DNA from: Octopus sinensis
Lineage: Eukaryota
Reading direction: 5' to 3'
Length of the DNA: 64,000 nt
Assembly (NCBI RefSeq): GCF_006345805.1
Contig: NC_043001.1
Location: 13,950,001-14,014,000, forward strand
Part shown: piece by piece, positions 1,921 to 60,952 of the stretch
Layout of the letters: every line of letters starts with the position of its first letter
Position numbering within the stretch: the stretch's first letter is position 1
Made by a program: the position numbers and the translations under genes
The notes under the pieces: model-generated
Seen by the model: only the letters and a program-made list of their open reading frames with translations
What the model was told of the DNA's origin: nothing
Database searches by the model: none

Positions 1921-1978
1921 AATAACATGTGCATTCAGAAAAAAATGCTAACCTGTGTGTTAGCTATGATTCTGCCAT

Positions 1979-2040
1979 AAGGCGGCGAGCTGGCAGAAAC
2001 GTGAACACGCCGGGCGAAATGCGTAGCCGTATTTCGTCTG
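1979..2040 (+). mobile_element. SINE family 1 (tRNA-like head, Nin/Deu-like core), 5' part of a copy split by the Tx1 LINE
   Basis: GGCGGCGAGCTGGCAGAAACG head; continues at 7366; outer TSD TATGATTCTG(C/T)CAT at 1965-1978 and 7550-7563. Confidence 0.85.
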
Positions 2041-2207
2041 TCGCACATGTGTTCGTGAAGTACGAATTGCTGTTTCGTGGTGTTAATATTGTTAACAACT
2101 GTTGTTTCTTGTTAAACTGTTGAATAACTTAACTGTTGGAGTTTTCAATTGAAAACACTTAGTGCTTGTGGTAGCACGCGTTGTTCATTCCCCCTTTGGG
2201 GGGAAGA

Positions 2208-3359
2208 ATGTCGTCTAGCATGGAGCCTACCGTTGGAGCAGAAATACTTGTTTCTCCTGTTGAGAGGAGGAAATACATGTCCGGCGAGGAGCCAACTACA
2301 GACAAGGAAATAGGGGTTTCCCCCGCTACAAGAAGGAATAGCAGAGAGGATAATATATTTGATATTTTTGGAGATGTGTCTGAGAGCTCGTCAGAACTTT
2401 CACCAGAAGAGTTTCCGACTTTGCCAGAGAACAAAGGCATTGTGTCGAAGAGAATAATTGATGTGCCTAGCATCCAGATAGAACCAAAAAATGGAAAAAA
2501 AAGTTTTGCGTTGGCTGCTGGGGGTGGAACCCAGATACTGTCGACGAATAAAAGCGAAATTATGAAATACAGCAAAATGATGGAAATAACTGACAACGGT
2601 GTGAAAATTGAACCTCCGCAAAAGTTAATACAGGAAGAAAAGCAAAAAACAATAATTTTCAAAACATATTGTCTACAAAAACGAAAAATTGAAAGAATGT
2701 CAGAAGAGAAAATAGAAAAGTGCTTAAAGCCAATATTGGGCGACGTAGTATTTCTGAGAAGAGGAAAAAAATTCGGAACGGTGGAAGTAAGGTTCACCAA
2801 TAAAGAAATAGCACACAAGAACTCAGTTGAAACGTTGAAAACGAACGACGTGGAGTTAATCCCCTATTATATGGGGATGAGGACGTCGCGAATAAAAATT
2901 ACAAGGGTCCCGCCAGAGGTCGAACCTATGTGGTTGTTGGCGGCAGTCCTAATCAAAGAGGTAGAAAAAATTACTCTCCTCCAGGCTACCGCTACGGAAA
3001 ACCCACGCTGGGATGGTCAAACAATTAATCTTCTCATTCAAGCGGACCCTAAAATAATTCAAACAATTCCTGAGACAATTGAGGTAGGGGAGGAGAACCT
3101 CGTGGTGTTTGTTGAGGGCCGAAAACCTCGATGTTTTTTATGTGGTCAATTAGGCCACATTCGAAGGAACTGCAAGGAAAATGAAGAAGAAGAGGAAGAG
3201 GAGCAAAAAGACAAAGAGGAAGAAGATAAAGAAGAAACAGATGAGAAAAAACAACAAACAAAAGAAAAATACAACCAGCAACCCAGCCGAGAGCGGCGAC
3301 TACTACAGAACAACGACCAAAAAAGACTGCCAGAAGAGAAAAAGAAGAAAAAGGCATAA
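2208..3359 (+). CDS. Tx1-like ORF1 (gag-like nucleic-acid-binding protein); probably continues to 3731 through frameshifts in A runs
   Basis: ATG at 2208; RRM-like FGTVEVRF segment; zinc knuckle CFLCGQLGHIRRNC; acidic/basic low-complexity tail. Confidence 0.8.
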   Translation: MSSSMEPTVGAEILVSPVERRKYMSGEEPTTDKEIGVSPATRRNSREDNIFDIFGDVSESSSELSPEEFPTLPENKGIVSKRIIDVPSIQIEPKNGKKSFALAAGGGTQILSTNKSEIMKYSKMMEITDNGVKIEPPQKLIQEEKQKTIIFKTYCLQKRKIERMSEEKIEKCLKPILGDVVFLRRGKKFGTVEVRFTNKEIAHKNSVETLKTNDVELIPYYMGMRTSRIKITRVPPEVEPMWLLAAVLIKEVEKITLLQATATENPRWDGQTINLLIQADPKIIQTIPETIEVGEENLVVFVEGRKPRCFLCGQLGHIRRNCKENEEEEEEEQKDKEEEDKEETDEKKQQTKEKYNQQPSRERRLLQNNDQKRLPEEKKKKKA

Positions 3360-3746
3360 TAGCCGTATACACTAAAGATACTGAGCTCATGAGAGACATT
3401 CAACTCATAAAGACTGTAAAAAATTGATAACCTTTCAGAGGAATTTATCAATTACGACATATATGAAGTCTCAAATAAGACTTATAGAATTCTACAAAAT
3501 AAGTACAGAAAGACTGTATCTTCATTGAGATTAGATTTTAACAAGTCGATATTTCATGGATTACCAGCTCCGATCCCGCGAGAAAAGGAAAAGGTGGAGA
3601 TTCCCCCTCCACCTGATAATTCTGTGTCGGTGGTGAGACGGGATTTTGACAAATCTATTTCCCAAGACCGTCCACCTCCGACCCTGGATCAAAAAAAAGG
3701 TGGAGGGTCCCCCGCCACCGGACAATCCTAATTAAACAGGTAAGTG

Positions 3747-6700
3747 ATGGCTATTCACATTGGTTGTTTAAATGTTCATGGCCTGTTGTCAAGCTGGAAG
3801 CAAGGACGCTTTCTGAATGACATCAGGTCGAGAAATTTGGATGTAATTGTTGCAACGGAAACCCGGGTGAAGGGCAAGAGATCTGCTCCCCCTCCTGAAC
3901 GGCTACGAGAAATACGTTTCTCCGAGTCGGGCGGGAGGTGGGGGTGGGTGTTGGTCCTACTAAAAAGAAACCGGGTAGCCGAGAAAAAGTTGGTTTTTTC
4001 TGACCCAGAAGGCAGGCTGGTCGTTCTCGACTTGACATTCAGTTGTGGCAAGACAATCAGGCTGGTCGCTATTTACGCACCAAACATTATTGGCCCGCAA
4101 ACTGAATATTTTCGTGGCCTAGGAAAGTTCCTAGCCACGTCGCATTCACTAGTAGTGTTAGGAGACTCTAATACAATATGTGCAGCACACACAGATTGTG
4201 TTGGCTGAAACTCGAACATGAACAGAAAATGTAACCAGGCTTTCGGGATCTGCTAAGTCAATTTCAGCTAGCAGATCCATATAGGTTGGAGCACCCGAAC
4301 ACTCCACAGTGGACGTGGTCAAATAGTGACGGGTCTACCAGAACATATCTAGATAGGATTTTAATTAGAGAAAAAGATAAGTCCATAGTTGAGTGTCCAC
4401 AGTTTTTTCTAGTCAGCTACAGTGACCACAAGATGGTTACCTGTAAACTGACGGTAGATAAGTTGCATAGACAGGGATCTGGCTACTGGAAACTCAATAC
4501 GTCCCTTTTGGCGATTGAGGAGTACAGAAAGCGGATCAAGATGTTAATACAGAGGGCATTAACAGTACCATCATTAATAACAAATGGTGGTACGCCCTAA
4601 AAAGAGCCATCAAATATGAGTCTATTAGGTTTAGCATAAGTTTAGCTAAGAAGGGACGTAAAATAGGAGATGGTCTAGTTAAGGAACTAGAAGAAGCCTG
4701 GAGGACTGGTAATACAGACCAAGCGAGGGTGAAAAGACTGGAGTTAAACCAGCATCTTGAAGCCCACCACATGGGAAGTATTACCAGAGCTAAGTTACGT
4801 GCAATGGGAAGTGAAGGAATCAAAGCCGCTGGATGGGCCCGAGTGGTGGAAGCTCGGCAAGGAAATAGCTCCTCTATTCGGTCTTTGACGAATCAAAATG
4901 GTGTCTTGATAAACGAACCCGAGAAAATGTGTGAGGTCTTTCGGGAGTACTTCGCCCAGCTATTCGGGGGTGACGGCGGTCCTGGTGGTGGGAGAGCCCT
5001 CGAGGACTTTCTTACCGGGCTGCCGTGCCTCTCAGGGTCGGATGCGGAGTCTTGCGAATGGCCAATCACACCTGAGGAGGTGATGGAGGCGTTGGCCGTG
5101 TGTAAAGCGGGTAAGTCACCGGGACTTGATGGTCTTCCGTACGAGCTGTATAAATGTATGCCAGACTTGTTCGGGCAACTACTGACTGACGTGTACGCGA
5201 ACTGGAAACAGAATGGGTTTATCCCCAGATCTGTGCGCCGGGGGTAGTGACGTTGGTCAGAAAGGACCCGGACAAGGGGGACGTTCTAGAGAATTTCAGG
5301 CCATCACTCTGTTAAACGCAGAAGTGAAGATTTTGGCCAAGGTTCTAGCAAAAAGGTTGGCGCGTGTCGCGAATGGTATAGTTGGTGAGGCACAGACATG
5401 TGCCATCCCAGGCAGAACCATTCAGGATACCCTCCATCTTATTCGCTATACCATAGAGAGGTTTGGTAATAAATCTGGCAAAGGTGGGGCATTGGTGCAT
5501 TTGGACCAGTCTAAAGCTTTTGATAGGGTTGACCATCGATACCTAGCGACTGTACTTGCGCGGTTTGGCCTGGGCCTTGGCTTCCTCAGGTGGTTTATCG
5601 CTTTGTACCACAACATTGACTCGATAGTTCGGAGCCGTTCTGCATCAGACGCTCGGTTCGTCAAGGATGTCCGCTTTCACCACTTTTGTATGTGATGGCT
5701 CTCGAGCCATTACTGCAAAGGTTGAGTGGCATCCCGAGAGAACCAGGACTAGAGGAGTTTGTTACGGCTTTCGCGGATGATATCACTATCAGTGTAACCA
5801 CAGTGGCACGCCTACGTGAAGTAGGTAAGACTATTGAGGCTTACGAGGAGGTAGCAGGAGCAAAGATTAACCGGGAAAAGTCGGTCGGCTTGCAGCTCGG
5901 CACCTGGGTTGGCAAGTCGATGCCTTCAGACAGTGTTGTTAGGCGCTGGACGGAGGGACCGGTTAAGTTGCTGGGAGTCTGGTTTGGACCAGGCCTCCAG
6001 ATAGAGAAGAACTGGACGGAGGTATTGAGCAGGGTGGCTGCAGTAGTCAAGACCTGGTCTTGGCGGTGGCTATCCCTGAAAGAGAGGGCGGAGGTGGCCA
6101 ATGTGTTTATCGCATCGGTCATTACCTACCGCCTGACCGTCGTGCCCTGTCCGGATTCGTGGTTGATCAGGTTGGAGAGACAGCTCTTTCGCTTTTTGTG
6201 GAAGGGCAGGTCGCCACTTGTGAAACGCTCTGTCTGCTGTCAAAAGCCTTTAAATGGAGGTTTAGGGATGCCTTGGTTAATGATGCGCAGACATGCGTTG
6301 CGGTTGAGGCACCTCTGGATTCTCCTGGATAGTGAACGGGTGTGGTCTCCGCTGGCCAGACAAATGTTCCCTGAGTTCAAGAGTTTTTGCGAACAGGAAG
6401 CCTGGTGTTCTCGTAGACCGAGGTCGAGTGAGTGGCATAAAGAGTGCCGTAAGGCCCTCTTGCTGTTCCGGCGCTCGGGCAACGCCAGCGGTGGGGGTTC
6501 CACACGGATTTTATATAGTGGGTTGGTAGAGTCTGAATGCGACGATGGCCTGGGGTCGACTCTAGGTCTCGGATTTATTCAACTGGACAGCTTGTTTCAT
6601 CGTACATTCGGGTTGAGAACGTTGGACAACTTCCAAAAGTCCTTAACCTGGCAATGCTGCAGAGGTGCCTTGCCGGTTTGGGATAAGCTCGCAAGACATG

Positions 6701-7115
6701 GTAAACGTCAGTCGCCGACCTGTCCAAGATGCGAGGGGGACAGGGAAACCGTCCCTCACGCTATTGTTCAGTGTCCGGAGATAACTGAAATGTGGGCTTA
6801 TGCTGAACATCTGTTGTCCGGCGAAGGAAGAGTACGGCTGTCGACTGAGTCAATTATAAAAATTGACCCACCGGGAGTTCTAACGAACGAAGGTAAGAAT
6901 TGTTTTCTCACTGTTGTAGCAATAGCAAAAGAGGCTGTATGGAATACTAGGATAAAAGGAATTAAGACTTTATCTCTGGTGACAATTTACGATCCTTTTT
7001 TTCTTTTCATTTGAAAAGGAAACTGTGGCTGGAGAAGAGGTGTCTGTCAGAGTGTACGTTCCAAAAGAGATGGAAGTATGTTGCACGAGTGTTTTGCGTG
7101 CAAGGAACCGTGTGA
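3747..7115 (+). pseudogene. Tx1-like ORF2 (APE endonuclease - RT - CCHC), frameshifted
   Basis: IGCLNVHGL, ATETRV, AIYAPN, LGDSN, LDRILI, SDH; KSPGLDG, ITLLNAEVKILAK, LDQSKAFDRVDH, RQGCPLSP (shifted frame), FADDI, LLGV; CPRCEGDRETVPHAIVQC; likely stop TGA 7113-7115. Confidence 0.9.
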
Positions 7116-7365
7116 ATAGACGAGGGAAAAAAAAAAAAAGAGGAAAAATAAAAAGGTATCAGCGGTAGATCGGGGCTTGTGGGATTGGAGCGTAACTTGA
7201 TCATCGCTTCATTTGTATTGTTTTTGTACTGTGTATTCCATTCGATTTTTATGTATTGTATTTTATTTTTGATGTCACATTTATGTAAAATCATATCGAT
7301 TCACTGATCCCATCAGTTGTACTGTCCATATCTATGTTTGGCCCCCGGTGGGCAATAAAGAAATT

Positions 7366-7549
7366 CGTATTTCGTCTGCCGTTACGTTCTGGGTTCAAAT
7401 TCCGCCGAGGTCGATTTAGCCTTTCATCCTTTCAGGATCGATAAATTATGTACCAGTTACGCACTGGGGTCGATATAATCGACTTAATACCTATGTCTGT
7501 CCTTGTTTGTTCCCTCTGTGTTTAGCCCCTTGTGGGTAGTAAAGAAATA
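7366..7549 (+). mobile_element. SINE family 1, 3' part of the split copy (tail A)
   Basis: B-box GGTTCAAATTCC, core GCCTTTCATCCTTTC..GATCGATAAATTATGTACCAG, tail GCCCCTTGTGGGTAGTAAAGAAAT. Confidence 0.85.
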
Positions 7550-7949
7550 TATGATTCTGTCATGTCTTTATATATTGTGGTTATCAATCTGTAATACATT
7601 CGCTTGCTATGAAAAAAAATATTTTCCACCACTTAAAGCTTAGCCAAGTCTTTCGTCTCCCTTTCCGTAGTTATCTGCATTTGCTCTCTGAATGAGTTCG
7701 ATCACATTTTACTTCATAAAATTTGTTCCAAAAACATTATTTCTGGGAAATGTTTCAGCGACCATCACTCTCCTTTCGTCATAAATTCCAATGCCAATAA
7801 TTATCTATCCTAAGTATTTCACAACAATTTTTTTTTAAATTCACATTTTTTCCATGTGTAATTGTAGTCAAAATTCTCTCTTCTCTGAAACTACTGACAA
7901 ATATTTCATCTGCTCTTGACTCTTTCACCTCGCCACTAATATATTTATT

Positions 7950-8180
7950 TCTTTACTACCCACAAGGGGCTAAACATAGAGAGGACAAACAAGGACAGAC
8001 AAAGGGATTAAGTCGATTATATCGACTACAGTGCATAACTGGTACTTATTTAATCGACCCCGAAAGGATGAAAGGCAAAGTCGACCTCGGCGGAATTTGA
8101 AATCAGAACGTAGCGACAGACGAAATATTGCTTAGCATTTCGCCCGGCGTGCTAACGATTCTACCAGCTCGCCGCCACTA
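7950..8180 (-). mobile_element. SINE family 1 (tail A)
   Basis: Full head-core-tail; flanking duplication CGCCACTAATATATTT. Confidence 0.85.
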
Positions 8181-8695
8181 ATATATTTTGAACTAATCTA
8201 CAATCGTATTGAATCCACTTGTCAGCTTAACATTTATGTTAATATGCTAGAGATAGTGATACATAAAATGGAAAATTTTCATATGGAAAAATAATTTTGG
8301 AATATTTACCAATATTTGCTTTCATGAAATTTTCATTCTCTTCATTGCAAAATCTAAAGAAATATTAGAAAGTATCTGTGACATCATAAATCTTTCTTTA
8401 ACTTGAAGGTTTATTATAAACCAGTTTATAACGAATGCAATAATGGAGTACAGCACAATATGTTAACTCATACATAATTTTTTATAATTGGAACGATCGT
8501 ATGACAAACTGTCTCCACCAACATATTTCATTACTTTTCCTTAAATTAAAGTCAATGAAATCAACGATGAAATGAAAATGTAAAAGTTATGTTTCTAATA
8601 AATTGTCTTACATATTTCATATGTAAATTTCTGTTCGCTGAATCCGATGTAACAACTGCTGTTTGCCCAGAATATATTTCATCTTTAATTTCTTA

Positions 8696-8925
8696 GGCGG
8701 CGAGTTGGTAGAATCGTTAGCACACCGGGCGAAATGCGCGGCCGTATTTCGTCTGCCGCTACGTTCTGGGTTCAAATTCCGCCGAGGTCGACTTTGCCTT
8801 TCATCCTTTCGGGTTCGATAAATTAAGTACCAGTTACGCACTGGGGTCGATGTAATCGACTTAATCCGTTTGTCTGTCCTTGTTTGTCCCCTCTATGTTT
8901 AGCCCCTTGTGGGCAATAAAGAAAT
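8696..8925 (+). mobile_element. SINE family 1 (tail A)
   Basis: 24-bp TSD ATATATTTCATCTTTAATTTCTTA at 8672-8695 and 8926-8949. Confidence 0.9.
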
Positions 8926-10112
8926 ATATATTTCATCTTTAATTTCTTACCAGTTCAGAATTCATATGAAGTTATAAAAAGCAAATGCAGTTTTGAGAAC
9001 ATTTTGTACAATTTCCAAGGAGTTGTGATATAATCTCTGCATTTATTGTGGTCCTTCTATGAAAGCTGTGGGCACGGCTGTTACTTTTTACCAATATTCA
9101 CTATATAAGAGTCCATGGAATCCTAAATTGCTTCGTAATATATATCTCTATCGTTTTGTTTATTAGAAACTACGCACTAGAATCTAGCTTCCTCAATTTC
9201 AGAATACGTATCGTAATTAATATTCTTGAGCTAAATGACTTCACAATTGGAGATAATTAAAATAATTTGAAAGCATTATCAGCCTCTATTTGTAGTAATT
9301 AACTTCTATAATTTATTGAGATTTTTCCCCCCGCAACATCAGATGACAAATTAACTGGTATCTTTCCCCAAATGGAAATAGTAATTAAAATTGTAGCAGT
9401 TCATAAAATGGTTAAACAGAAGGGATTATTTGAAGTAAAGGTTCCCTTGCAACGCCTCTTTTACACAGCCTAATTAGTCGTTCCAAGTGTTGGGTTTCCA
9501 AATTAGTACATGGCATAATTACTGCAAATTACTCGCAAGTAGACTGTTTACATGTTTGGATACCAAATCTAAAAACCTGTTTGTCAGCAGCATCCATTGG
9601 AAATTAATTGAGCATTAAGAGAATCTAAGTTTTATTTACTATTATCTTGAAATAAAGCAGCGAATCAAATTCACTATCTCTTAGCCTCATTGTCTGATGA
9701 TGCCCCAGGATATCTCTGTCGATTGTGTTGTGTATTCGCATCGTCCAATTCATTTGTTTCAGCAAACCCTGTTTATAATTTTAAGGAGTAAATTCATTTG
9801 GAAGCTAATTGATTGAAGAACTGGCCATGCATTTTATGCATGTACACACAGATTTTACTTAAACTATTCGTTTTACTGTTTATCAAATCTGTTATAAACC
9901 GTAATGTTAGATCTAAGACCGACATCTTTTACATTAGTTAAAAGTTCTTTCCACGCTGAAGATGGAACAGGAATTGATGATGGTGCCACCTGTACCTTAT
10001 CATAGCATCAACTCAATTTATGACTTTTGTAATTATTTGAAATTCTTTCTCACATTCATAATTTTCTTACAATTTACAACTGCTTATAGCATATGTTTTT
10101 GTTTGTTATATA

Positions 10113-12254: not shown

Positions 12255-12440
12255 TTGGCACAAGGCCAGCAATGTCGAGCAAATAAGTAAGTCGATTACA
12301 TCGGCCTCAGTGCAAAAGTGGTCCACTTATTTCATCCTTGCCGTCCCCGGCGGAATTTGAGCTCCGAACGTAAAATCGCAAGATATGCCTACAAATATTT
12401 TGCCCGGCGAGCTAACGATCCTGCCAGCTCACCGCCTTAA
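12255..12440 (-). mobile_element. SINE family 1, old copy with alternative tail (GGCCTTGTGCCAAAA)
   Basis: Head AGGCGGTGAGCTGGCAG, B-box and core recognisable. Confidence 0.7.
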
Positions 12441-13775: not shown

Positions 13776-13814
13776 GTTGTTCTTATTATTATTATTATTA
13801 TTATCATCATTATT

Positions 13815-14167
13815 ATTTCAAATTGTTGCCACAAGGGCAGCTTGGGAGATTACATTGACCCCAGAGTTCAATTGGTACTTATTTTATCGAACCCGAAAGA
13901 ATGAATGGCGGAATTCGAACTCAGAACGTTAAGACAGACGAAATACCTATTTTTTTACTACTCACAAGGGGCTAAAGACAGATGGGACAAACAAGGACAG
14001 ACAAACGGATGAAGTCGATTATATCGACCCCAGTGCGTAACTGGTACTTATTTAATCGATCCCGAAAGGATGGAAAGCAAGGTCGACCTCGGCAGAACGT
14101 AGCAGCAGACGAAATACAACTACGCGTTTCGCCCGGCGTGCTAACGTTTCTGTCAGCTCGCGGCCTT
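13815..14167 (-). mobile_element. SINE family 1 composite (tail-A unit joined to a second unit at the GTATTTCGTCTG site)
   Basis: Junction at 13935-13950. Confidence 0.8.
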
Positions 14168-14380
14168 AATAACTATTAAATGCAATAACTAACTAGAATT
14201 CGATGTTGCTGTCCACTTTCTTATCGTTGCATTAAATGTGATAAACCTATTTAATGCAATGCAGAGCAAGAAGAGAATGTGAATGAGACAATATTTTTGA
14301 TTTGATCTTGGTGCAAAAAACCAGATTGACTCTACTGCATGCCCTGGCTCTGTCGATGGACAAAATACTGTCACAAATGT

Positions 14381-14732
14381 GCTTAGCGGTATTTCATCTG
14401 TCGCTACGTTCTGAGTTCAAATTCCGCCGAAGTCGACTTTGCCTTTCATCCTTTCGGGGTAGATTAAATAAGTACCAGTTACGCACTGGGCTCGATATAA
14501 TCGACTCCGTTTGTTTGTCTTTGTTTATCCTCTCTGTGTTTAGCCTCTTGTGGGTAGTAAAGAAATAGGTATTTCATCTGTCTTTACATTCTGAGTTCAA
14601 ACTCCACCGAGATCGACTTTGCCTTTCATCCTTTCGGGGTCGATAAATTAAGTACCAGTTGCGAACTGGGGTCGATCTAATCGACTGGTCTCCTCCCCAT
14701 AAATTTCGGACCTGATGCCTAGAGTAGAAAAG
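14381..14732 (+). mobile_element. SINE family 1 composite (tail A then tail B)
   Basis: Junction ...AAAGAAATAG|GTATTTCATCTG at 14569; 17-bp TSD AATACTGTCACAAATGT at 14364-14380 and 14733-14749. Confidence 0.85.
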
Positions 14733-18644: not shown

Positions 18645-18730
18645 AATGTATATATGAGGGGGTATATATGCGTAACGTTTAAATATATATACATATGTAT
18701 ATATATGTATATATACATGCATATGTATAC

Positions 18731-18769
<39 letters not shown>

Positions 18770-19970
18770 CATATGTATACATACATACATATGTATACAT
18801 ATATATATGCATATGTATGCATACACATATATATATATGTATGTATATCTTTATGTATTTGTATATGCATATGTGAATATGTAAATATATATATATATAT
18901 AAGTGTGTGTGTATGTATGTATGTATGTATGCCTGTATATATATGTGTGTGTATATATATGTATATATATCTGTGCATATGTACATATCTGTACATATGC
19001 ATATATCTGTGCATATGTACATATACGTGTGTATATATATGTACATATACGTGTGTATATGTATGTACATATACGTATTTATATAATATGTATAGATGTT
19101 TGTGTATATGTATATAGGTATTTGTGTGTGTATATATATATATACGTGTGTGTGTGCGTGTATATATATATATATGTGTGTGTGTGTATATGTATATATG
19201 TGTGCATGTGTGCGTATATATATATATGTGTGTATGTAAGTGAATGTGTATATATATATATATGTGTGTGTGTATATATATATATCTATATGTGTATAAA
19301 TATATGCATGTGTATATGTGTATGTATATATATGCATGTATATGTACATACATATATGTACGTGTATATATATGTATGTATATATGTATGTATATATATA
19401 TGTATGTGTATATGTATGTGTGTATATACATGTATATGTATATGTATGTGTGTATATACATGTATGTGTATATGTATGTGTGTATATACATGTATGTGTG
19501 TATATACATGTATGTATGTATATGTATATATATATGTATGTATGTATATATATATATGTATGTATGTATATGTATGTATATATAAATGTATATACATGTA
19601 TGTATATATATATATATATATGTATATACATGTATGTATATGTATGTATATGTATGTATGCATATGTATGTATATACGTATGTATGTATATACGTATGTA
19701 TGTATATACATATGTATGCATATGTATATACATATGTATGCATATGTATATGCATATGTATATACATATGTATGCATATGTATATACATATGTATGTATA
19801 TACATATGTATGCATATGTATATACCTATGTATGCAGATATATATGTGTCTATATATATACGTATATGTGTTTATATTCATGTGTATATATACATGTGGA
19901 TATATATATATATGTATATATTTATGTTTTTTGTGTTTATTTGTATGCTTGGATGTTTATATATGTTAAA
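18645..19970. repeat. Long degenerate TA/TG/ATGT microsatellite
   Basis: Direct reading; source of spurious Y/I/M/C-rich ORFs. Confidence 0.95.
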
Positions 19971-20748: not shown

Positions 20749-22622
20749 CCGTTGCCAATTTTGCACCATGCACATGAAAGGTTGCATCATCACTCATGTA
20801 AATACCCAGGTCTCGCACCGATTGTGCCTCTGGGATTGCAATCCCTCCAGGTCCAGTTATTTATTGGGTATTGCATTTAGTTTTGCATGCTGATAGCATA
20901 AAGCTTGAAAATTTTCAGCATTGAACTGCATGATATTCTTTTCAGCCCACTTGTATATTTTGTCCAGCTCACATTGCAGGTGCTTAGTATCTTTAGGGCT
21001 CTGTATTGCCTGTGAAACTTTTGTATCATCTGCATAACTTGTGATCGTGGCTCTCTGCGTGGCTGAGGGCATGTCTGAGAGGGCCATTATGAGCAGTAGT
21101 GGTCCCAAAACAGTGCCTTGCGGAACACCGCTCACTATTTGCGTGTTAACGGAAGTGGCCCCATTGGCTACTATCACCTGACTTCTATCCCTCAGAAAGT
21201 CAGAAGCCATTCTCCCAATTTTCCTACTATGCCAAGATCCCGCAGTTTGTGACATAGCATTCCATGATCGACTTTATCAAAGGCCTTTGCAAAGTCGAGA
21301 TATATGACTTCCACATTTGAGTGGTTGAGCAGTCGTTGCAGCACCCTGTTGTAGGAGCTGAGTTAAGCAGCTTCATCCTGGTCGGAAACCATGTTGGGTG
21401 TCAGGCAGCAAGTCATTTTCTGCAAGGAAGGTGATTAGTTTCCTTCTGACTATTCGTTCCATGACTTTCCTGATGTGTGAGGTCAGAGAGATAGGTCTGT
21501 AGTTCACGGCCTCCGCTCTGCTACCTCCTTTATGAATAGGGCATATTTTACCTTCCTTCAGTTTTCTTGGAAGTTTGCCAGTTGCAAGGAAGCTCTGAAA
21601 GAGGAACTGCAGTGGTATTGCTAAGACTCTCTTACATACTTTTAGAAGGATTGCTGGGAATCCATCGGGGCCAGTAGCTGAGTTTGTTTTCATTTCATCT
21701 ATAGCCTGTATTACATCGTCTTCCTTAATATTGATGTAATCAATATTGTAATCAATTGATGTAATCATCGCTGCCTCTGATTTTATATCTGCAGTGGTAA
21801 AGAAGTCAGTTGGATTGCTGACTTGAAAATGCCCTAGGGGTGGAGTGAAAATACTCTTGAATTTCTCATTTAGTATTTCACTTATCCTCATTGGATTTCC
21901 TGTGAGTGTGCCATCCTTTTCAAGGAGTGGCCCTATCCTACAGTGCCCCTTAGCTGTTTCTTTGGCATACCTGTAGAAAGCTCTGGGGTTAGATTTTATG
22001 TTGTCTATAGCCCAGGCTTCTTTGCCAGCTCTTTCTTTTTCATGGGAGAGTTGCAGACATTTTTTCAATTTCCAACAGTTTTATTTTCAGGCGGGACTTT
22101 TCACTGCTTTCAATCTGTTTGTTTAGGCGATTTGAAACTTTTGTACGCCGTCGCATTAGAATTTTCCTCTCACTGGAGATTTTGTTCTTGTGTACAGTGG
22201 CCTTTCTCTCTGGGACACATTTGTAGTATATGGCTTGCATTACAGACATGAATTGTTGAAGTTTCATGTCGATGTCTGGCGAGGAGAGACATTCAGGCCA
22301 GTTTTGTTTGAGGATCTCTTTCTCAATTTGTTTCCAGTTTGCCTTATGGAAGTTCAAGCTGGAAAGATTCTGAGGGTTTCTTGTAGGCTGCATGTCCATG
22401 CTTTCCTTTGGCCCGTACATGGTCAGCTCTACCATGTTGTGATCCGAGAGTACTGTCGGTGTCACTTTCACATTATGGATGAGATCCATATTATTTGTGA
22501 AGCAGAGATCCAGTATGTTACCTTCCCTGGTTGGTTGGAGTATTACTTGCTCCATGTACAGAGTGTTGATGAGGTTCAGGAGGGACCTCGCCTGTCCTTG
22601 TTTGCATCGTGTCATTCCTGGG
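20749..22622 (-). mobile_element. CR1-clade LINE internal fragment (end of APE through RT)
   Basis: PTREGNILDLCF, SDH, SATGPDGFP, YRPISLTSH, QHGFRPG, GVPQGTVLGP, SYADDTK; closely similar to 30420-32270. Confidence 0.9.
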
Positions 22623-25839: not shown

Positions 25840-26094
25840 TATATATATATATATATATTATATAGATATATATATATATGTAAATATATATATTATATGT
25901 AAATATATATATATATGTAAATATATATATATATGTATAATATATATATGTATATATATATAATGTTATATATATATATAGGTAAATATATATATATATT
26001 GTAAATATATATATGTAAATATATATATATATGTATATAATATATATGTATATATATATGTATGTATATATATATGTATGTATATATATATATG

Positions 26095-26125
<31 letters not shown>

Positions 26126-26193
26126 GTAATATATATATATATGTAAATATATATATATATGTAAATATATATATATATGTATATATATATATG

Positions 26194-26226
<33 letters not shown>

Positions 26227-26341
26227 GTAAATATATATATATATGTAAATATATATATATGTAAATATATATATATGTATATATATATATATGTATATAT
26301 ATATGTATGTATATATATATGTATGTAATATATAATATATG

Positions 26342-26372
<31 letters not shown>

Positions 26373-26423
26373 GTATTATATATATATATGTATATATATA
26401 TATATGTATATATTATATATATG

Positions 26424-26454
<31 letters not shown>

Positions 26455-26499
26455 GTATATAATATATATGTATATTATATATGTATATATATATATATG

Positions 26500-26550
<51 letters not shown>

Positions 26551-26583
26551 GTATATATGTATATATATATATATGTATATATG

Positions 26584-26614
<31 letters not shown>

Positions 26615-26690
26615 GTTAATATATATATTATATGTATATATATATATGTATATATGTATATATATATGTATATATATATATGTATATGTG

Positions 26691-26735
<45 letters not shown>

Positions 26736-26771
26736 GTATATAATATATATGTATATATATATATATATGTG

Positions 26772-26836
<65 letters not shown>

Positions 26837-26892
26837 GTATATTATATATATTATTATAATATATATATTATATATATATGTATATATATATG

Positions 26893-26961
<69 letters not shown>

Positions 26962-27030
26962 TATATGTATGTATATATATATGTATGTATATAATATGTG
27001 TGTATATATAATATGTATATATATATATAT

Positions 27031-27079
<49 letters not shown>

Positions 27080-27304
27080 GTGTATATATATTATATGTAT
27101 ATATATATATATTGTATATATATATATATGTGTATATATATATGTTATATATATATGTATATATATGTATATATATATGTATATATATATATGTATATAT
27201 ATATGTATATATATATATGTATATATATTATGTATATATATATATGTATATATATATATTGTTATATATATATATTATATATATATATATATATATGTAT
27301 ATAT

Positions 27305-27376
<72 letters not shown>
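25840..27376. repeat. Long degenerate (TA)n microsatellite with periodic G
   Basis: Direct reading. Confidence 0.95.
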
Positions 27377-33344: not shown

Positions 33345-33870
33345 TTGTTTCTAATTTTGGCACAAGGTGATCAATTTCTAAGGAATATGTGCCAATCAGC
33401 ATTCGATTGGCACTTATTTTATAGACCCCGGAGAAATGAAAGGTAAAGTCGAGCTCGGTTGAAATTGAACTTAAAATATAAAGACGCACGAAATGACGCT
33501 AAGCTTTTTGTCGGCGCGGTAACGATTCTGCCAGCTCGCTGTTTCACCAACACACTACATAATCCTTTCTACAAATGGCAAAAAGCCTGAAATGTGTGGG
33601 GAGTGATCTGGTCGATAACATCAACCCCCAGAGTTTCACTGATATTTAATTTATCGACCCCGAAAGAATGAAAAACAAAGTTGACCTCGGTGGAATTTGA
33701 ACTCAGAACGTAGCGGCAGCCGAAATACCTATTTCTATACTACCCACAAGGGGCTAAACACAGAGAGGACAAACAAGGACAGACAAACGGATTAAGTCGA
33801 TTATATCGACCCCAGTGCGTGACTGGTACTTATTTAATCGACACCGAAAGGCAGACGAGATACCGCTAAC
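33345..33870 (-). mobile_element. Two adjacent SINE family 1 units; the second is a tail-A composite
   Basis: Target junction at 33717-33732. Confidence 0.75.
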
Positions 33871-34594
33871 GTTTCTCCCATTGCCACCATATAAATTCTC
33901 TATAGAATTTAGGGAAAAAACTAAAAGAACCAGACATTAGTATCGATTGACGATACTGACAAAGATGTATCTCAGTCAGGGCCGAGGATCCTTAATGAAT
34001 CGAGTCCATCTTGCCAGTGGTTTAAGAGCTTTGAATGATTTTAATACAAACGTGCTGGTATAATTTTAAGGACCAGCGGTAGCCAGATAATCTGAGATGT
34101 GAAAGACATACTACTGGCTGAGTGAATAACGTGACGCGATCGTCACGTGCCTGCAACATGTTACTGGAAGAAGTAGATATATAAGAGTAGCTATATATAA
34201 ATAGAGCAATCACACTATCCATTTTCCGATCACACGATGAGCTTGGAATGTATGTATAAATGAAATCTTTACCTTTTCTACTATACACTACAATTGTATA
34301 TTTTTTCCCAACACAATTTCGCTACAGAAAACCACGATATACAATGGAAATTGTTTCCTTTACACACACACACACATTTAAATGTATCTGTGCATATGTA
34401 GAATACATACTAATGCACATACATAAGTGTTAATATCTACATTTCTTCATAGGCATATACATACATGTACAGAACAATGAAATACATGCAAGGCTACCTA
34501 TAAAAGAACGTGCATTAGAATATACACATGCACGTGTGGGTATATTTGTATAGAATCTTTATTTACCTGTCCACATGCATTTGTGTATGCGTGC

Positions 34595-41042: not shown

Positions 41043-41258
41043 CTATTTCTTTATTACCCACAAGGGGCTAAACATAGAGGGGACAAACAAGGACAGATAT
41101 AGGTATTAAGTCGATTACATCAACCCCAGTGCGTAACTGGTACTTAATTTATCGACCTCGAAAGGATGAAAGGCAAAGTCGACCTCGGCGGAATTTGAAC
41201 TCAGAACGTAACAGCAGACGAAATACGGCTACGCTAACGATTCTGCCGGCTCGCCACC
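41043..41258 (-). mobile_element. SINE family 1 (tail A)
   Basis: Head-core-tail A; short flanking duplication GGTTTCAG on the minus strand. Confidence 0.85.
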
Positions 41259-48085: not shown

Positions 48086-48972
48086 TAATCACGAGCTGGT
48101 CTCTGTCTTGTTTAAGGGAATTTCTATGATTCTGGGGACGCAGTGAAGTTTTCTAGCACTCGAACAAAATACGAAAACTGTTATTAATTATCTGCTTTCC
48201 TTTGATGCGGAACCATCACAGATGGATATCTATAGATATAAAGCTGAAGTTGTCTGTGTATGGTAGGTTTAGTAGCCTTCAACTAACACTATCTCCTCCG
48301 AGACCCTGCGGCGCAAGTTGACCACAATTGAGACTATGATAGAAAAAGGCTTTCTCTTCCTTCCGTAGAAGAAAAAATTCAGATCGAACCATGGTAACAC
48401 CAAAAATTATTTACATCAAAAAGCTGTCTACGTATCGTACTTAAGTTATACACACTGTCGACCAGCCACTGCAGTATTTTTCTTAAAATAACATTTCTTC
48501 TGACTTTAGTTAAAAGTATAATTCATATTGGAGAAAAAGAGAAAAATAATTCATCCCAGCAGCGGCCAACGAGAGCGCCAGAATTTCGACCTTTAGGTTT
48601 CTTTAGTGGCGTATATTCTATCAACCACATTCCTAGCTGAGAATTCACCGTCTCCGATATACGAAAACAATAATAAAAAATTCGCTCACGTTGCGAATAG
48701 CTGTCCAACTGCTTAAAAATCCAACTGCCCCGATTGCCTGTACTGTATCTAGTGCGATCGATATTAGCTGTTCAGTCAGTATTGAAATTTTATTGCAGTC
48801 CATTGCAGGAAATTACTCTCATCATGTAAACTTAATTGGCTGTCATTACTTCCTAACACAGTCTGACTATTTTTCCTGCATTGAAAATTCTTCTTTCTAT
48901 CACTAACCAAACCAACCACTTATTTTCATAAATATTTGAGAATGAAAATAGTGAGTTTTTAAGCACTCATTC

Positions 48973-49364
48973 TTTTCTACTCAAGAAACAAGGCCCGAAA
49001 TTGGGGGGACGGAGACCAGTCGATTAGATCGACCCCAGTACGCAACTGGTACTAAATTTATCGACCCTCAAAAGGATGAAAGGCAAAGTCGACCTCCGCG
49101 GAATTTGAACTTAGAATGTAGCGGCAGACGAAATACCTATTTCTTTACACAAGGGACTAAACACAGAGAGGACAAACAAGGACAGACAAACGGGGTAAGT
49201 CGATTACACCGACCCCAGTGCGTAACTGGTACTTAATTTATCGACCCCGAAGGGTGAAAGGCAAAGTCGACCTCGGCGGAATTTGAACTCAGAACGTAAC
49301 GGTAAACGAAATACGGCTACGCATTTCGCCCGGCGTGCTAACGATTCTGCCAGCTCGTCGCCTA
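48973..49364 (-). mobile_element. SINE family 1 composite (tail A then tail B)
   Basis: Junction at 49125-49140. Confidence 0.85.
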
Positions 49365-53739: not shown

Positions 53740-54170
<431 letters not shown>

Positions 54171-54766
54171 AGGTAGATGCCTTTGTGTTTTTATGTTTTT
54201 ATCTCTTAATGTCTTTGTTTCTCCTCCCCTATCACTTGACAACCGATGTTGGGTGTGATTACGCCAGCGTAAATTAGCAGTTCGACAAAGAAAAATCGCT
54301 AAAATAAGTAAAAAGAAAGCTTTAAAAAAATAATTTCGGATTGCGATTTATTCAACTGAACACTCTTCAAAGCCGTGCCCCAGCAAGGCCGCAGCCTAAG
54401 GACTGAAACAAGTAGAAAAGAATAGGATATACTGTAAATATATATTGTATAACCTAAATTGAGAAACCAACTTACTCAGCAAAAACTATCAACTTTTCTA
54501 AGTATCTGATTTGTTTCAAATAAAAATGTTGGTTTTGTCAAATTGAATTTTGTGTTTGCGTTAAATTTTCCCGAGATATCCGAGACACTCTGCTAAGTAT
54601 CATTACATTAATTATAGGAGATACTCACAAGCAGACATTTTCTCTTTCAAGTAGAAATTAAACTTGACTGAGGGTGAATATTGTTCTTTACTTGTTGGTG
54701 CGCGTGTTGCTTTACATATAGGTATATATATATATATATATGTGTGTATATGCGTGCGTCTCTCAC

Positions 54767-57088: not shown

Positions 57089-57321
57089 GGGCGGCGAGCT
57101 GGCAGAAACGTTAGCACGCCGGGCGAAATGCTTTGCGGTATTTCGTCTGTCGTTACGTTGTGAGTTCAAATTCCGCCGAGGTCCACTTTGCCTTTCATCC
57201 TTTCGGGGTCGATAAATTATGTACCAGTTACGCACTGGGGTCGATGTAATCGACTTAATCCATTTGTCTGTCCTTGTTTGTTCCCTCTATGTTTAGCCCC
57301 TTGTGGGTAGTAAAGAAATAG
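57089..57321 (+). mobile_element. SINE family 1 (tail A), founder of the adjacent array
   Basis: Full head-core-tail; TSD-like GGTAT(G/A)GTAA at 57073-57082 and 59262-59271. Confidence 0.9.
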
Positions 57322-59262
57322 GTATTTCGTCTGCCGTTATGTTACACACTAGGACCAATGTAATCGACTTAATCCCTTTGTCTGTCCTTGTTATTCTCTT
57401 CTATGTTTAGCCCCTTGTGGGTAATAAAGAAATAGGTATTTCGTCTGCCGTTATGTTACGCACTAGGACCAATGTAATCGACTTGATCCCTTTGTCTGTC
57501 CTTGTTATTCTCTTCTATGTTTAGCCCCTTGTGGGTAGTAAAGAAATAGGTATTTCGTCTGCCGTTATGTTACGCACTAGGACCAATGTAATCGACTTAA
57601 TCCCTTTGTCTGTCCTTGTTATTCTCTTCTATGTTTAGCCCCTTGTGGGTAGTAAAGAAATAGGTATTTCGTCTGCCGTTATGTTACGCACTAGGACCAA
57701 TGTAATCGACTTAATCCCTTTGTCTGTCCTTGTTATTCTCTTCTGTGTTTAGCCCCTTGTGGGAAATAAAGAAATAGGTATTTCGTCTGCCGTTATTTAC
57801 GCACTAGGACCAATGTAATCGACTTAATCCCTTTGTCTGTCCTTGTTATTCTCTTCTATGTTTAGCCCCTTGTGGGTAATAAAGAAATAGGTATTTCGTC
57901 TGCCGTATGTTACGCACTAGGACCAATGTAATCGACTTAATCCCTTGTCTGTCCTTGTTTGTTCCCTCTATGTTTAGCCCCTTGTGGGTAGTAAAGAAAT
58001 AGGTATTTCGTCTGCCGTTATGTTACGCACTAGGACCAATGTAATCGACTTAATCCCTTTGTCTGTCCTTGTTATTCTCTTCTATGTTTAGCCCCTTGTG
58101 GGTAATAAAGAAATAGGTATTTCGTCTGCCGTTATGTTACGCACTAGGACCAATGTAATCGACTTAATCCCTTTGTCTGTCCTTGTTATTCTCTTCTATG
58201 TTTAGCCCCTTGTGGGTAATAAAGAAATAGGTATTTCGTCTGCCGTTATGTTACGCACTAGGACCAATGTATCGACTTAATCCCTTTGTCTGTCCTTGTT
58301 ATTCTCTTCTATGTTTAGCCCCTTGTGGGTATAAAGAAATAGGTATTTCGTCTGCCGTTATGTTACGCACTAGGACCAATGTAATCGACTTAATCCCTTT
58401 GTCTGTCCTTGTTATTCTCTTCTATGTTTAGCCCCTTGTGGGAAATAAAGAAATAGGTATTCGTCTGCCGTTATGTTACGCACTAGGACCAATGTAATCG
58501 ACTTAATCCCTTTGTCTGTCCTTGTTATTCTCTTCTATGTTTAGCCCCTTGTGGGTAATAAAGAAATAGGTATTTCGTCTGCCGTTATGTTACGCACTAG
58601 GACCAATGTAATCGACTTAATCCCTTTGTCTGTCCTTGTTATTCTCTTCTATGTTTAGCCCCTTGTGGGTAATAAAGAAATAGGTATTTCGTCTGCCGTT
58701 ATGTTACGCACTAGGACCAATGTAATCGACTTAATCCCTTTGTCTGTCCTTGTTATTCTCTTCTATGTTTAGCCCCTTGTGGGTAATAAAGAAATAGGTA
58801 TTTCGTCTGCCGTTATGTTACGCACTAGGACCAATGTAATCGACTTAATCCCTTTGTCTGTCCTTGTTATTCTCTTCTATGTTTAGCCCCTTGTGGGTAA
58901 TAAAGAAATAGGTATTTCGTCTGCCGTTATGTTACGCACTAGGACCAATGTAATCGACTTAATCCCTTTGTCTGTCCTTGTTATTCTCTTCTATTCTCTT
59001 CTATGTTTAGCCCCTTGTGGGTAATAAAGAATAGGTATTTCGTCTGCCGTTATGTTACGCACTAGGACCAATGTAATCGACTTAATCCCTTTGTCTGTCC
59101 TTGTTATTCTCTTCTATGTTTAGCCCCTTGTGGGTAATAAAGAAATAGGTATTTCGTCTGCCGTTATGTTACGCACTAGGACCAATGTAATCGACTTAAT
59201 CCCTTTGTCTGTCCTTGTTATTCTCTTCTGTGTTTAGCCCCTTGTGGGTAATAAAGAAATAG
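57322..59262 (+). repeat. SINE-derived tandem array, 17 units of about 114 bp
   Basis: Unit starts 57322, 57436, 57550, 57664, 57778, 57891, 58003, 58117, 58231, 58343, 58457, 58570, 58684, 58798, 58912, 59035, 59149. Confidence 0.95.
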
Positions 59263-59294
59263 GTATAGTAAAGTCAATTAACTAGAATAATAAT

Positions 59295-60524: not shown

Positions 60525-60568
<44 letters not shown>

Positions 60569-60610
60569 TATATGTGTGTGTATATATATATATATATATA
60601 TGTGTGTGTC

Positions 60611-60643
<33 letters not shown>

Positions 60644-60904: not shown

Positions 60905-60952
<48 letters not shown>

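What the first reader, a model, noticed from the sequence alone, without database searches (positions are those of the whole stretch)
1965..7563. Tx1-clade LINE inserted at a defined site inside a SINE, with nested TSDs
Seen: the 5.3-kb LINE is bounded by the 13-bp TSD CGTATTTCGTCTG (2028-2040, 7366-7378). That motif lies between the A- and B-box of a family 1 SINE whose halves carry their own 14-bp TSD (1965-1978, 7550-7563). Known: Tx1-clade APE endonucleases are often sequence-specific (Xenopus Tx1 into a DNA transposon, Keno into U2 snRNA, Dewa into tRNA arrays, Kibi and Koshi into microsatellites). Inference: this family targets a SINE, a very abundant and harmless landing pad that, on the tail evidence below, it also amplifies. 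I know of no described Tx1 family that both targets and mobilises the same SINE.
Basis: partly seen in the sequence, partly recalled or inferred. Interest (0 to 1): 0.9.

Follow-up and report, generated by a model that had tools for sequence, protein, structure and literature searches.

The report
Dead LINE nested in its partner SINE
A broken 5.3-kb L1/Tx1-type jumping gene sits inside a copy of the short element (SINE) it appears to mobilise, cut at a spot in the SINE that has been used more than once. The evidence fits a taste for a short TAT-rich motif better than dedicated targeting of the SINE.

Summary
A 5325-bp LINE (2041-7365) lies between perfect 13-bp duplications, inside a 233-bp SINE that has its own 13/14 duplication.

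The LINE belongs to the L1 superfamily: endonuclease, reverse transcriptase and zf-RVT domains, with human L1 ORF2p as the best solved match. Its ORF1 carries a zinc knuckle. ORF2 is broken by five frameshifts and one stop. "Tx1" could not be tested by phylogeny.

The last 35 nt match the SINE tail (31/35). The tail is conserved in Argonauta hians LINEs and SINEs, so the partnership is well supported.

Dedicated targeting of the SINE is only partly supported.
- For: the same nick site (SINE position 49|50) is also the fusion point of a composite SINE seen four times in the window, and the unit boundary of a 114-bp satellite.
- Against: all four solitary partner SINEs here, and every LINE or SINE end with this tail in 27 kb of Argonauta, sit in unrelated DNA.

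What these sites share is TAT/TATTT at the start of the duplication. The SINE has one TATT on its sense strand, exactly at this site, and SINE copies hold about 13% of the window's TATTTC sites. The best reading is a short-motif preference that makes the SINE a frequent landing pad. No further LINE copies from this genome could be reached.

The parts
1965..1978 (.). Left copy of the host SINE's own target-site duplication (TATGATTCTGCCAT)
   Evidence: 13/14 match to 7550-7563, abutting both SINE ends
1979..2040 (+). Host SINE, 5' part (SINE positions 1-62), with the A-box-like motif
   Evidence: BLAST to the rejoined SINE and to other copies; alignment
2028..2040 (.). Left copy of the LINE's 13-bp target-site duplication (SINE positions 50-62)
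   Evidence: 13/13 identical to 7366-7378
2041..7365 (+). L1-superfamily (Tx1-like) LINE, 5325 bp, apparently full length, non-functional copy
   Evidence: Pfam Exo_endo_phos, RVT_1 and zf-RVT on the stitched ORF2. Best PDB match is human L1 ORF2p, E 2e-55 over endonuclease plus RT
2208..3359 (+). ORF1, 383 aa, open, one CCHC zinc knuckle; no L1-type Transposase_22 hit
3747..7014 (+). ORF2 (endonuclease about 3759-4440, RT about 5297-5982, zf-RVT about 6637-6795). Broken by five frameshifts (near 4205, 4590, 5244, 5303, 5630) and one in-frame stop (near 4232)
   Evidence: Three-frame translation and stitching; Pfam
7331..7365 (+). LINE 3' tail shared with the SINE (...CTATGTTTGGCCCCCGGTGGGCAATAAAGAAATT)
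   Evidence: 31/35 identical to the SINE tail; BLAST E 1e-6 within the window; conserved in Argonauta LINEs and SINEs
7366..7549 (+). Host SINE, 3' part (positions 50-233). Its first 13 bp are the right copy of the LINE's duplication. B-box-like motif at 7392-7403
7550..7563 (.). Right copy of the host SINE's duplication (TATGATTCTGTCAT)
14380..14726 (+). Composite SINE: family-1 SINE (5'-truncated at position 42) joined at its tail to a second SINE starting at position 50. A 17-bp duplication (AATACTGTCACAAATGT) flanks the whole composite
48970..49363 (-). Composite SINE, same junction (tail GAAATA|GGTATTTCG)
33556..33880 (-). Composite SINE, same junction, different second-half subtype
13790..14167 (-). 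Composite SINE, same junction, second half with yet another tail ending in (AAT)n
57089..59266 (+). Full family-1 SINE followed by 17.9 units of a 114-bp satellite. Unit = SINE positions 50-72 plus 140-233; every unit boundary is tail|position 50
7946..8176 (-). Solitary family-1 SINE in non-SINE DNA; duplication AATATATTAGT(GGCG)
8695..8926 (+). Solitary family-1 SINE in non-SINE DNA; 22-bp duplication TATATTTCATCTTTAATTTCTT; its tail (GGGCAATAAAGAAAT) is the closest to the LINE's
41044..41234 (-). Solitary family-1 SINE (internal deletion) in non-SINE DNA; duplication GGTTTCAG(G)TGGCG

Best explanation
The window comes from an octopod cephalopod; the species was not identified.

Shown:
- A full-length but now dead L1-superfamily (Tx1-like) LINE inserted by target-primed reverse transcription into an older SINE copy.
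- The first (bottom-strand) nick fell between SINE positions 49 and 50. The second nick fell 13 bp downstream, giving the 13-bp duplication.
- The LINE and the SINE share their last ~35 nt.

Inferred:
- The SINE is a non-autonomous partner copied by this LINE's reverse transcriptase, or a close sibling's, through recognition of a specific 3' end.
- The machinery has a short-motif preference: it nicks 0-3 nt upstream of TAT/TATTT(C) on the strand that carries the element.
- The SINE has a single TATT on its sense strand, at positions 52-55. Any same-orientation insertion into a SINE is therefore funnelled to the same nucleotide.
- Because SINEs are so abundant, they hold a sizeable share of all such motifs (about 13% of TATTTC sites in this window).

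The SINE is therefore a frequent landing pad rather than a dedicated target. Re-use of the spot has produced an amplified composite SINE (a family-1 SINE fused to a second SINE from position 50) and seeded a 114-bp satellite.
For: Nested duplications and rejoined SINE.

LINE architecture and L1 affinity:
- Exo_endo_phos, RVT_1 and zf-RVT on the stitched ORF2.
- Human L1 ORF2p E 2e-55, against R2 at 1e-17.
- ORF1 zinc knuckle.

Shared tail: 31/35 nt. It is conserved in Argonauta hians LINEs (50-57% ORF2 identity) and SINEs.

Same nick site to the nucleotide: the LINE (TAGC|CGTATTTCG), four composite SINE copies and about 17 satellite unit boundaries (GAAATA|GGTATTTCG). One composite copy has a 17-bp duplication around the whole unit, so the composite moves as one element.

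Not SINE-specific:
- Solitary partner SINEs at 7946, 8695 and 41044, and the host SINE itself, lie in unrelated DNA.
- The Argonauta full-length LINE has the duplication TATTTTTAAAATTTGTA in AT-rich DNA.
- A second Argonauta LINE end abuts (ATT)n.

Motif statistics:
- TAT starts within 4 nt of the tail in 6/7 window junctions (background 0.165, P=1e-4) and in 13/17 Argonauta junctions (background 0.078, P=7e-12).
- It does so in 8/10 junctions where the duplication proves the motif is target DNA (P=2e-5).
- TATT lies within 10 nt in 8/13 junctions, against 6.5% background.
- Four elements with other tails have no TATT in their flanks.

Site counts: one TATT on the SINE sense strand, at position 52. 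17 of 127 TATTTC sites outside the satellite are the SINE site.
Against: - Only one LINE copy of this family could be examined. The preference is inferred mainly from SINEs and from a sister family in another genus.
- The motif was chosen after looking at the data, so the P values are optimistic.
- In Argonauta, part of 'CTAT' may belong to the element's tail rather than the target. One duplication-verified case shows CTA as element-derived.
- The partner SINEs could be moved by a sibling LINE whose endonuclease is less specific than this one. Kojima (2015) inferred this for SINEU-1/2 versus SINEU-3.
- Identical nick position in three structures could also mean recognition of more than TATTTC.
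Confidence: 0.6

Rival explanations
1. Dedicated sequence-specific targeting. The endonuclease of this LINE family recognises the extended SINE sequence around CGTATTTCGTCTG, so most LINE copies sit at SINE position 50. The family both lands in and amplifies the same SINE.
For: - The same nucleotide is the LINE junction, the fusion point of the composite SINE and the satellite unit boundary.
- Composite second halves fall into at least two subtypes and the first halves are mosaic, so there may have been several independent fusions.
- Many Tx1-group families are target-specific. Tx1-Mar and SINEU share a transposon target, with tandem insertions and master copies that carry target fragments.
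Against: - 4/4 solitary partner SINEs in the window are outside SINEs.
- None of about 17 intact SINE target sites in the window carries a nested SINE with both duplication copies.
- Argonauta relatives with the same tail insert into unrelated AT-rich DNA, and their SINEs lack this head altogether.
- A 6-mer preference alone already predicts about 13% of hits at this site.
Confidence: 0.22
2. Pure coincidence. The LINE landed at random in a very abundant SINE. The composite SINE arose not by insertion but by template switching of the reverse transcriptase, from a second SINE's RNA whose 5' end happened to be at position 50 onto the 3' end of a family-1 SINE RNA. The satellite is a derivative of that composite.
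For: - Family-1-related SINE sequence covers 4.4-7.3% of the window, and SINEs make up 11.6% of the Octopus vulgaris genome. A random hit in a SINE is therefore not rare.
- Template switching is an accepted route to chimeric SINEs and tail exchange.
- The composite could be a single ancient event.
Against: - Agreement of the two junctions to the exact nucleotide has a chance of roughly 1 in 200 if positions are uniform.
- There is no microhomology or filler at the composite junction that would mark a template switch.
- The TAT/TATTT enrichment at duplication starts, in unrelated targets and in a second genus, shows insertion is not random.
Confidence: 0.13

Closest known systems
Tx1-Mar LINEs and SINEU SINEs of crocodilians (Kojima 2015, PMC4494074)
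   Same: An L1/Tx1-group LINE and the SINEs it is inferred to mobilise share an insertion preference for an abundant repeat. Preference is graded (13%, 23% and 90% of copies). Tandem SINE insertions occur, and master copies carry a piece of the target.
   Different: There the target is a separate Mariner DNA transposon, and the partnership was argued from the shared target. Here the hot spot lies inside the partner SINE itself, and the partnership rests on a shared 35-nt tail. Most partner SINE copies seen here are outside the repeat.
Strictly target-specific Tx1-group families: Tx1L (into Tx1D), Keno (U2 snRNA genes), Kibi and Koshi ((TC)n and (TTC)n microsatellites), as cited in PMC4494074; Dewa (tRNA arrays) and Mutsu (5S rRNA genes), named from my own knowledge
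   Same: Endonuclease-RT-zinc-finger ORF2; insertion in a fixed orientation at a defined nucleotide of a multicopy sequence.
   Different: Those families have the same target in most copies. Here the only shared feature across targets is TAT/TATTT. Specificity of the LINE itself is untested (n=1).
L1-clade LINE/SINE pairs that need a specific 3' end (maize/sorghum LINE1-1_ZM lineage, Chlamydomonas L1-1_CR/SINEX-3_CR; Ohshima 2012, PMC3472496), and the eel UnaL2/UnaSINE1 paradigm
   Same: A specific 3' end, not just poly(A), is shared between an L1-superfamily LINE and a SINE, with a small stem-loop just upstream of the terminal repeat-like tail.
   Different: Found in an animal (cephalopod) lineage. 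The tail ends in AATAAAGAAAT(A/T) without poly(A). The hairpin evidence here is weak: 4 bp, -3 kcal/mol, and one pair with changes on both sides.
L1-Tx1 LINEs annotated in octopus genomes (PMC13282606, PMC8967140)
   Same: L1-Tx1 is the only L1-superfamily group listed among recently active O. vulgaris LINEs (13 families, 421 insertions). SINEs make up 11.6% of that genome.
   Different: In the passages read, those papers give counts only. They describe no tail, no partner SINE and no insertion-site analysis.

Membership tests
L1 superfamily (L1/Tx1 group) non-LTR retrotransposon | ORF2 with N-terminal apurinic-type endonuclease followed by reverse transcriptase | tested here: met
   On the stitched ORF2: Exo_endo_phos E 2.5e-5 (24.6 bits, cut-off 24.5) and RVT_1 E 8e-29. 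Aligns to human L1 ORF2p over residues 5-869, E 2e-55
L1 superfamily (L1/Tx1 group) non-LTR retrotransposon | C-terminal cysteine-histidine zinc-binding domain after the RT | tested here: met
   zf-RVT PF13966, E 2e-7, above cut-off; motif CPRCEGDRETVPHAIVQC
L1 superfamily (L1/Tx1 group) non-LTR retrotransposon | Closer to L1 than to other LINE groups | tested here: met
   Among solved structures, L1 ORF2p scores 2e-55 against R2 at 1e-17 or worse. Only PDB entries were compared, so CR1, RTE and Jockey were not represented
Tx1 clade | RT domain groups with Tx1 references (Tx1L, Keno, Kibi and others) in a phylogeny or in RTclass1 | not testable with these tools
   No labelled Tx1 sequences could be obtained. 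Two protein searches returned no named relatives other than Argonauta 'hypothetical protein'. Indirect support only: L1-Tx1 is the L1-type group reported in octopus
Tx1 clade | Target-specific insertion (Kojima 2015 criterion: one kind of sequence in more than 20% of flanks) | tested here: inconclusive
   One LINE copy, and it is in the SINE. Same-tail junctions: 2-3 of about 7 independent events in the window are at the SINE site, and 0 of 17 in Argonauta
Strictly sequence-specific LINE (Keno/Dewa/R2-like) | Nearly all copies, and copies of dependent SINEs, at the same target sequence | tested here: not met
   4/4 solitary partner SINEs lie in unrelated sequences. Argonauta relatives are in AT-rich or microsatellite DNA. 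Tested on partners and relatives, not on further LINE copies
LINE-SINE partner pair sharing a specific 3' end | Shared 3' terminal sequence between LINE and SINE | tested here: met
   31/35 nt identical; only the tail matches between the LINE and the rest of the window
LINE-SINE partner pair sharing a specific 3' end | Tail conserved in related LINEs and SINEs of another species | tested here: met
   Argonauta hians LINE ends and SINE ends carry ...GCCCTTGTGGCTAATA(A/G)AGAAAT
LINE-SINE partner pair sharing a specific 3' end | Experimental dependence of SINE mobility on the LINE's 3' end recognition | not testable with these tools
   Needs a retrotransposition assay
tRNA-derived SINE | Internal polymerase III A and B boxes | tested here: inconclusive
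   Good B-box-like GGTTCAAATTCC at position 76; only a partial A-box-like TGGCAGA at position 13
tRNA-derived SINE | Head recognisable as a tRNA | tested here: not met
   ARAGORN finds none in 64 kb. Rfam has no tRNA hit at gathering score or at E<=10

The most novel reading that the evidence does not exclude
A self-targeting LINE/SINE pair. Well over 20% of this family's insertions, and a disproportionate share of its SINE's, go into position 49|50 of the SINE itself. Repeated re-use of that site would then be the engine that builds octopod composite SINEs and SINE-derived satellites.

A further twist that the data do not exclude: the target motif (T)ATTTC is the reverse complement of the element's own 3' end GAAAT(A). 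Every such junction is a small palindrome (GAAAT-N2-4-ATTTC), which could mean that the tail RNA or its binding domain takes part in choosing the site.
Probability: 0.2. Interest if true: 0.65.

Novelty: new member of a known kind. Interest (0 to 1): 0.35.

Why it matters
Octopus genomes are unusually rich in SINEs: 11.6% of O. vulgaris, and about 40% of its repeat content. In what I read, no autonomous partner is named for them.

This locus gives a concrete candidate: an L1/Tx1-type LINE whose specific 3' tail matches one abundant SINE family and is conserved across octopod genera.

It also shows a simple route by which a modest endonuclease preference, combined with a very abundant SINE, yields nested elements, new composite SINE families and a satellite. 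This is useful for repeat annotation. Composite copies and the 114-bp array would otherwise be mis-split, and insertion-site statistics could be misread.

It does not by itself establish a new class of target-specific element.

Tried and rejected
1. Collecting other copies of the LINE, which was the decisive test.
- No second copy is in the window; BLASTN and TBLASTN find only the shared tail and two unrelated LINE remnants.
- Exact-pattern scans for the LINE tail and the SINE tail gave 0 hits in metagenome contigs, GTDB genome contigs and viral contigs.
- An exact look-up of ORF1 found nothing.
- The best protein relatives are only 63% identical, on 1.7-2 kb contigs that stop before the 3' junction.

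2. Naming the clade.
- A second protein search with the endonuclease-RT part returned only unnamed proteins at 30% identity or less.
- The Tx1L endonuclease paper (PMC85248) is not held.

3. tRNA origin of the SINE head. ARAGORN and Rfam were negative.

4. A conserved tail hairpin. RNAalifold gives only a 4-bp stem, -3.2 kcal/mol, with one pair changed on both sides. This is too weak to claim.

5. Priming by base pairing between the RNA 3' end and the nicked strand, as in L1. I rejected this for the octopus junctions. The primer strand ends in ...GAAATAC(G/C), the same sense as the tail and not complementary to it. At most a 2-nt TA overlap is possible. In Argonauta a CUAU-type overlap remains possible.

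6. Successive insertions as the origin of the 114-bp array. I considered this unlikely as the sole cause. The unit keeps positions 50-72 (10 bp more than the 13-bp duplication), the units are 96% alike, and there is a 453-bp higher-order period, all of which point to unequal exchange after a founding event.
Full report
**1. The observation**

- CGTATTTCGTCTG occurs at 2028-2040 and 7366-7378, identical 13/13. The neighbouring bases differ, so the duplication is exactly 13 bp.
- TATGATTCTGCCAT (1965-1978) and TATGATTCTGTCAT (7550-7563) match 13/14.
- Removing 2041-7378 rejoins a 233-bp SINE. It is colinear with, and 88-92% identical to, other copies in the window.
- The 13-mer is SINE positions 50-62. 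It lies between an A-box-like TGGCAGA (position 13) and a B-box-like GGTTCAAATTCC (position 76).
- ARAGORN and Rfam do not call the head a tRNA, even at E<=10. The tRNA origin is therefore a resemblance, not a result.

**2. The insert**

The insert is 5325 bp, in the same orientation as the SINE.
- ORF1 (2208-3359, 383 aa) is open and has one CCHC zinc knuckle.
- ORF2 (3747-7014) needs five frame changes and has one in-frame stop.
- Stitched, with X at each break, ORF2 carries Exo_endo_phos, RVT_1 (E 8e-29) and zf-RVT.
- It aligns to human L1 ORF2p over endonuclease plus RT at E 2e-55. R2 proteins score 1e-17.

This is an L1-superfamily LINE of the architecture Tx1 elements have. Whether it belongs to the Tx1 clade proper could not be tested, because no labelled Tx1 sequences were obtainable. 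Indirectly, L1-Tx1 is the only L1-type group listed among recently active Octopus vulgaris LINEs (PMC13282606).

The nearest named relatives are Argonauta hians proteins, so the window is from an octopod.

**3. LINE-SINE partnership**

- The last 35 nt of the LINE match the SINE tail at 31 positions. This is the only part of the LINE that matches anything else in the window.
- In two A. hians loci, LINEs with 50-57% ORF2 identity end in the same ...GCCCTTGTGGCTAATAAAGAAAT. So do local SINEs that share the body but not the head of the window's SINE.
- This is the classical signature of a LINE that needs a specific 3' end, together with its dependent SINE. Such pairs are known in the L1 clade but are uncommon there (PMC3472496).

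**4. Is the site special? Evidence that it is**

The same junction, to the nucleotide, occurs elsewhere in the window: SINE tail GAAATA followed by GGTATTTCGTCTG, which is SINE position 50 onwards.
- It is the fusion point of a composite element: a family-1 SINE plus a second SINE, with a different tail, from position 50. This composite is present four times (14380-14726, 48970-49363, 33556-33880, 13790-14167).
- None of the four has the second SINE's positions 1-49 upstream.
- One copy is flanked as a whole by a 17-bp duplication, so the composite is itself a mobile family.
- Their second halves fall into at least two subtypes, and the first halves are mosaic. One fusion or several cannot be distinguished.
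- The junction is also the boundary of every unit of a 114-bp satellite (57227-59266; 17.9 units, 96% alike; unit = positions 50-72 plus 140-233).

If positions were uniform, agreement with the LINE's nick site would have a chance of roughly 1 in 200.

**5. Is the site special? Evidence that it is not a dedicated target**

All four solitary SINEs with this tail lie in unrelated DNA:

| Element | Duplication |
|---|---|
| Host SINE | TATGATTCTGCCAT |
| 7946-8176 | AATATATTAGT(GGCG) |
| 8695-8926 | TATATTTCATCTTTAATTTCTT |
| 41044-41234 | GGTTTCAG(G)TGGCG |

- None of about 17 intact copies of the SINE site in the window holds a nested SINE with both duplication copies.
- In Argonauta, a near-intact LINE (L001 2886-8649) has the duplication TATTTTTAAAATTTGTA in AT-rich DNA.
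- Another Argonauta LINE end abuts (ATT)n.
- Argonauta SINE duplications include CTATTTCAAGGAA, TATATTRCATGAYATCC and TTATTTGCTAGCTGG.

**6. What the targets share**

TAT/TATTT sits at or within 3 nt of the start of the duplication.

| Set of junctions | TAT starting within 4 nt of the tail | Background | P |
|---|---|---|---|
| Window | 6/7 | 0.165 | 1e-4 |
| Argonauta | 13/17 | 0.078 | 7e-12 |
| Duplication proves the motif is target DNA | 8/10 | 0.165 | 2e-5 |

- TATT lies within 10 nt in 8/13 junctions, against 6.5% background.
- Four elements with other tails have no TATT in their flanks.
- The motif was picked after seeing the data, so the P values are optimistic.

The SINE has exactly one TATT on its sense strand, at positions 52-55. 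A TAT-preferring nick in a same-orientation SINE therefore has only one place to go. Outside the satellite, 17 of the window's 127 TATTTC sites (13%) are this SINE site. A short-motif preference plus SINE abundance is thus enough to explain a LINE at this position, and its recurrence.

**7. What could not be done**

- Tail scans of metagenome, GTDB and viral contigs gave no hits.
- ORF1 is not on record.
- The closest proteins (63%) sit on short contigs that end before the junction.

The LINE's own specificity therefore rests on n=1, plus inference from partner SINEs and a sister family.

A caveat from the closest precedent: in crocodilians, different Tx1-Mar families were inferred to drive SINEU families with 13-23% versus 90% target association (PMC4494074). 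A more specific LINE alongside less specific siblings is not excluded.

**8. Comparison with what is known**

- It works like Tx1-Mar/SINEU: an L1/Tx1-group LINE and dependent SINEs with a graded preference for an abundant repeat, tandem insertions, and master copies that carry target fragments.
- It also works like the L1-clade LINE/SINE pairs that need a specific 3' end.
- It differs in that the hot spot lies inside the partner SINE itself.
- It fails the test for a strictly sequence-specific family such as Keno, Dewa or Tx1L, at least as judged from partners and relatives.

**9. Verdict**

- Observation: confirmed.
- Interpretation: partly supported.
- Best explanation (0.6): short-motif preference that makes the SINE a frequent landing pad.
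- Dedicated SINE targeting: about 0.2.
- Chance plus template switching: about 0.13.
- Novelty: a new member of a known kind, of moderate interest.

Noticed in passing
window 57227-59266: A young 114-bp satellite: 17.9 units, 96% alike, with a 453-bp higher-order period. It is built from SINE positions 50-72 plus 140-233 and follows a full SINE at 57089-57320. The block may be flanked by GGTATGGTAA / GGTATAGTAA.
   Followed up: partly
window 14380-14726(+), 48970-49363(-), 33556-33880(-), 13790-14167(-): An abundant composite SINE family: a whole family-1 SINE fused to a second SINE from position 50, which carries a different tail (...GTAGAAAAGAAT, ...GGATTAT, or (AAT)n). It is presumably moved by a different LINE through the second tail.
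   Followed up: partly
all tail|target junctions, e.g. window 7360-7375, 8921-8936, 14562-14577; L001 9620(-): The target motif ATTTC is the reverse complement of the element's terminal GAAAT. Junctions therefore read GAAAT-N2-4-ATTTC, a small palindrome. Rfam even aligned one to a hairpin model by chance. The meaning is unknown.
   Followed up: partly
window 8160-8180 and 41225-41240 (5' junctions of the minus-strand SINEs): The duplications end in (G)TGGCG, which overlaps the SINE's own first bases (GGCGGCGAG). This is 5-6 nt of microhomology at the 5' junction, as seen in L1-type 5' end joining.
   Followed up: no
window 21373-22615(-) and 29804-31758(+): Remnants of two other, unrelated LINEs, with weak Exo_endo_phos_2, Exo_endo_phos and RVT_1 hits. 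Their 3' ends and any SINE partners were not examined.
   Followed up: no
window 59311-59507(-), 12262-12438(-), 33380-33540(-): Solitary SINEs that share the head (including the GGTATTTCG site) but have other tails ending in (ATT)n or (CTA)n. One promoter module appears to be combined with several LINE-specific tails.
   Followed up: no
L001 2886-8649 and L001 10830-11310 (Argonauta hians): A near-intact relative of the LINE (ORF1 476 aa; ORF2 interrupted once) carries two tails, at 8283 and 8649, inside one 17-bp duplication. Separately, two SINEs lie head to tail, separated only by CTATAG.
   Followed up: partly
protein P0004: A protein labelled as coming from a Herbaspirillum metagenome-assembled genome is 53% identical to this LINE's ORF2 C-terminus. 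This is almost certainly animal (cephalopod-like) contamination of that assembly.
   Followed up: no
window 25840-27375, 18683-19927, 53741-54178, 60533-61120: Very long AT-rich microsatellites: (TA)n of 1.5 kb, a 1.2-kb AT/GT-rich tract, and (ATAG)n. They raise the background for TA-rich motifs in this window.
   Followed up: no
window 7121-7150: An A-rich tract (GGGAAAAAAAAAAAAAGAGGAAAAATAAAAAGG) about 100 nt after the ORF2 stop, inside the LINE 3' UTR and well upstream of the true, non-poly(A) end.
   Followed up: no
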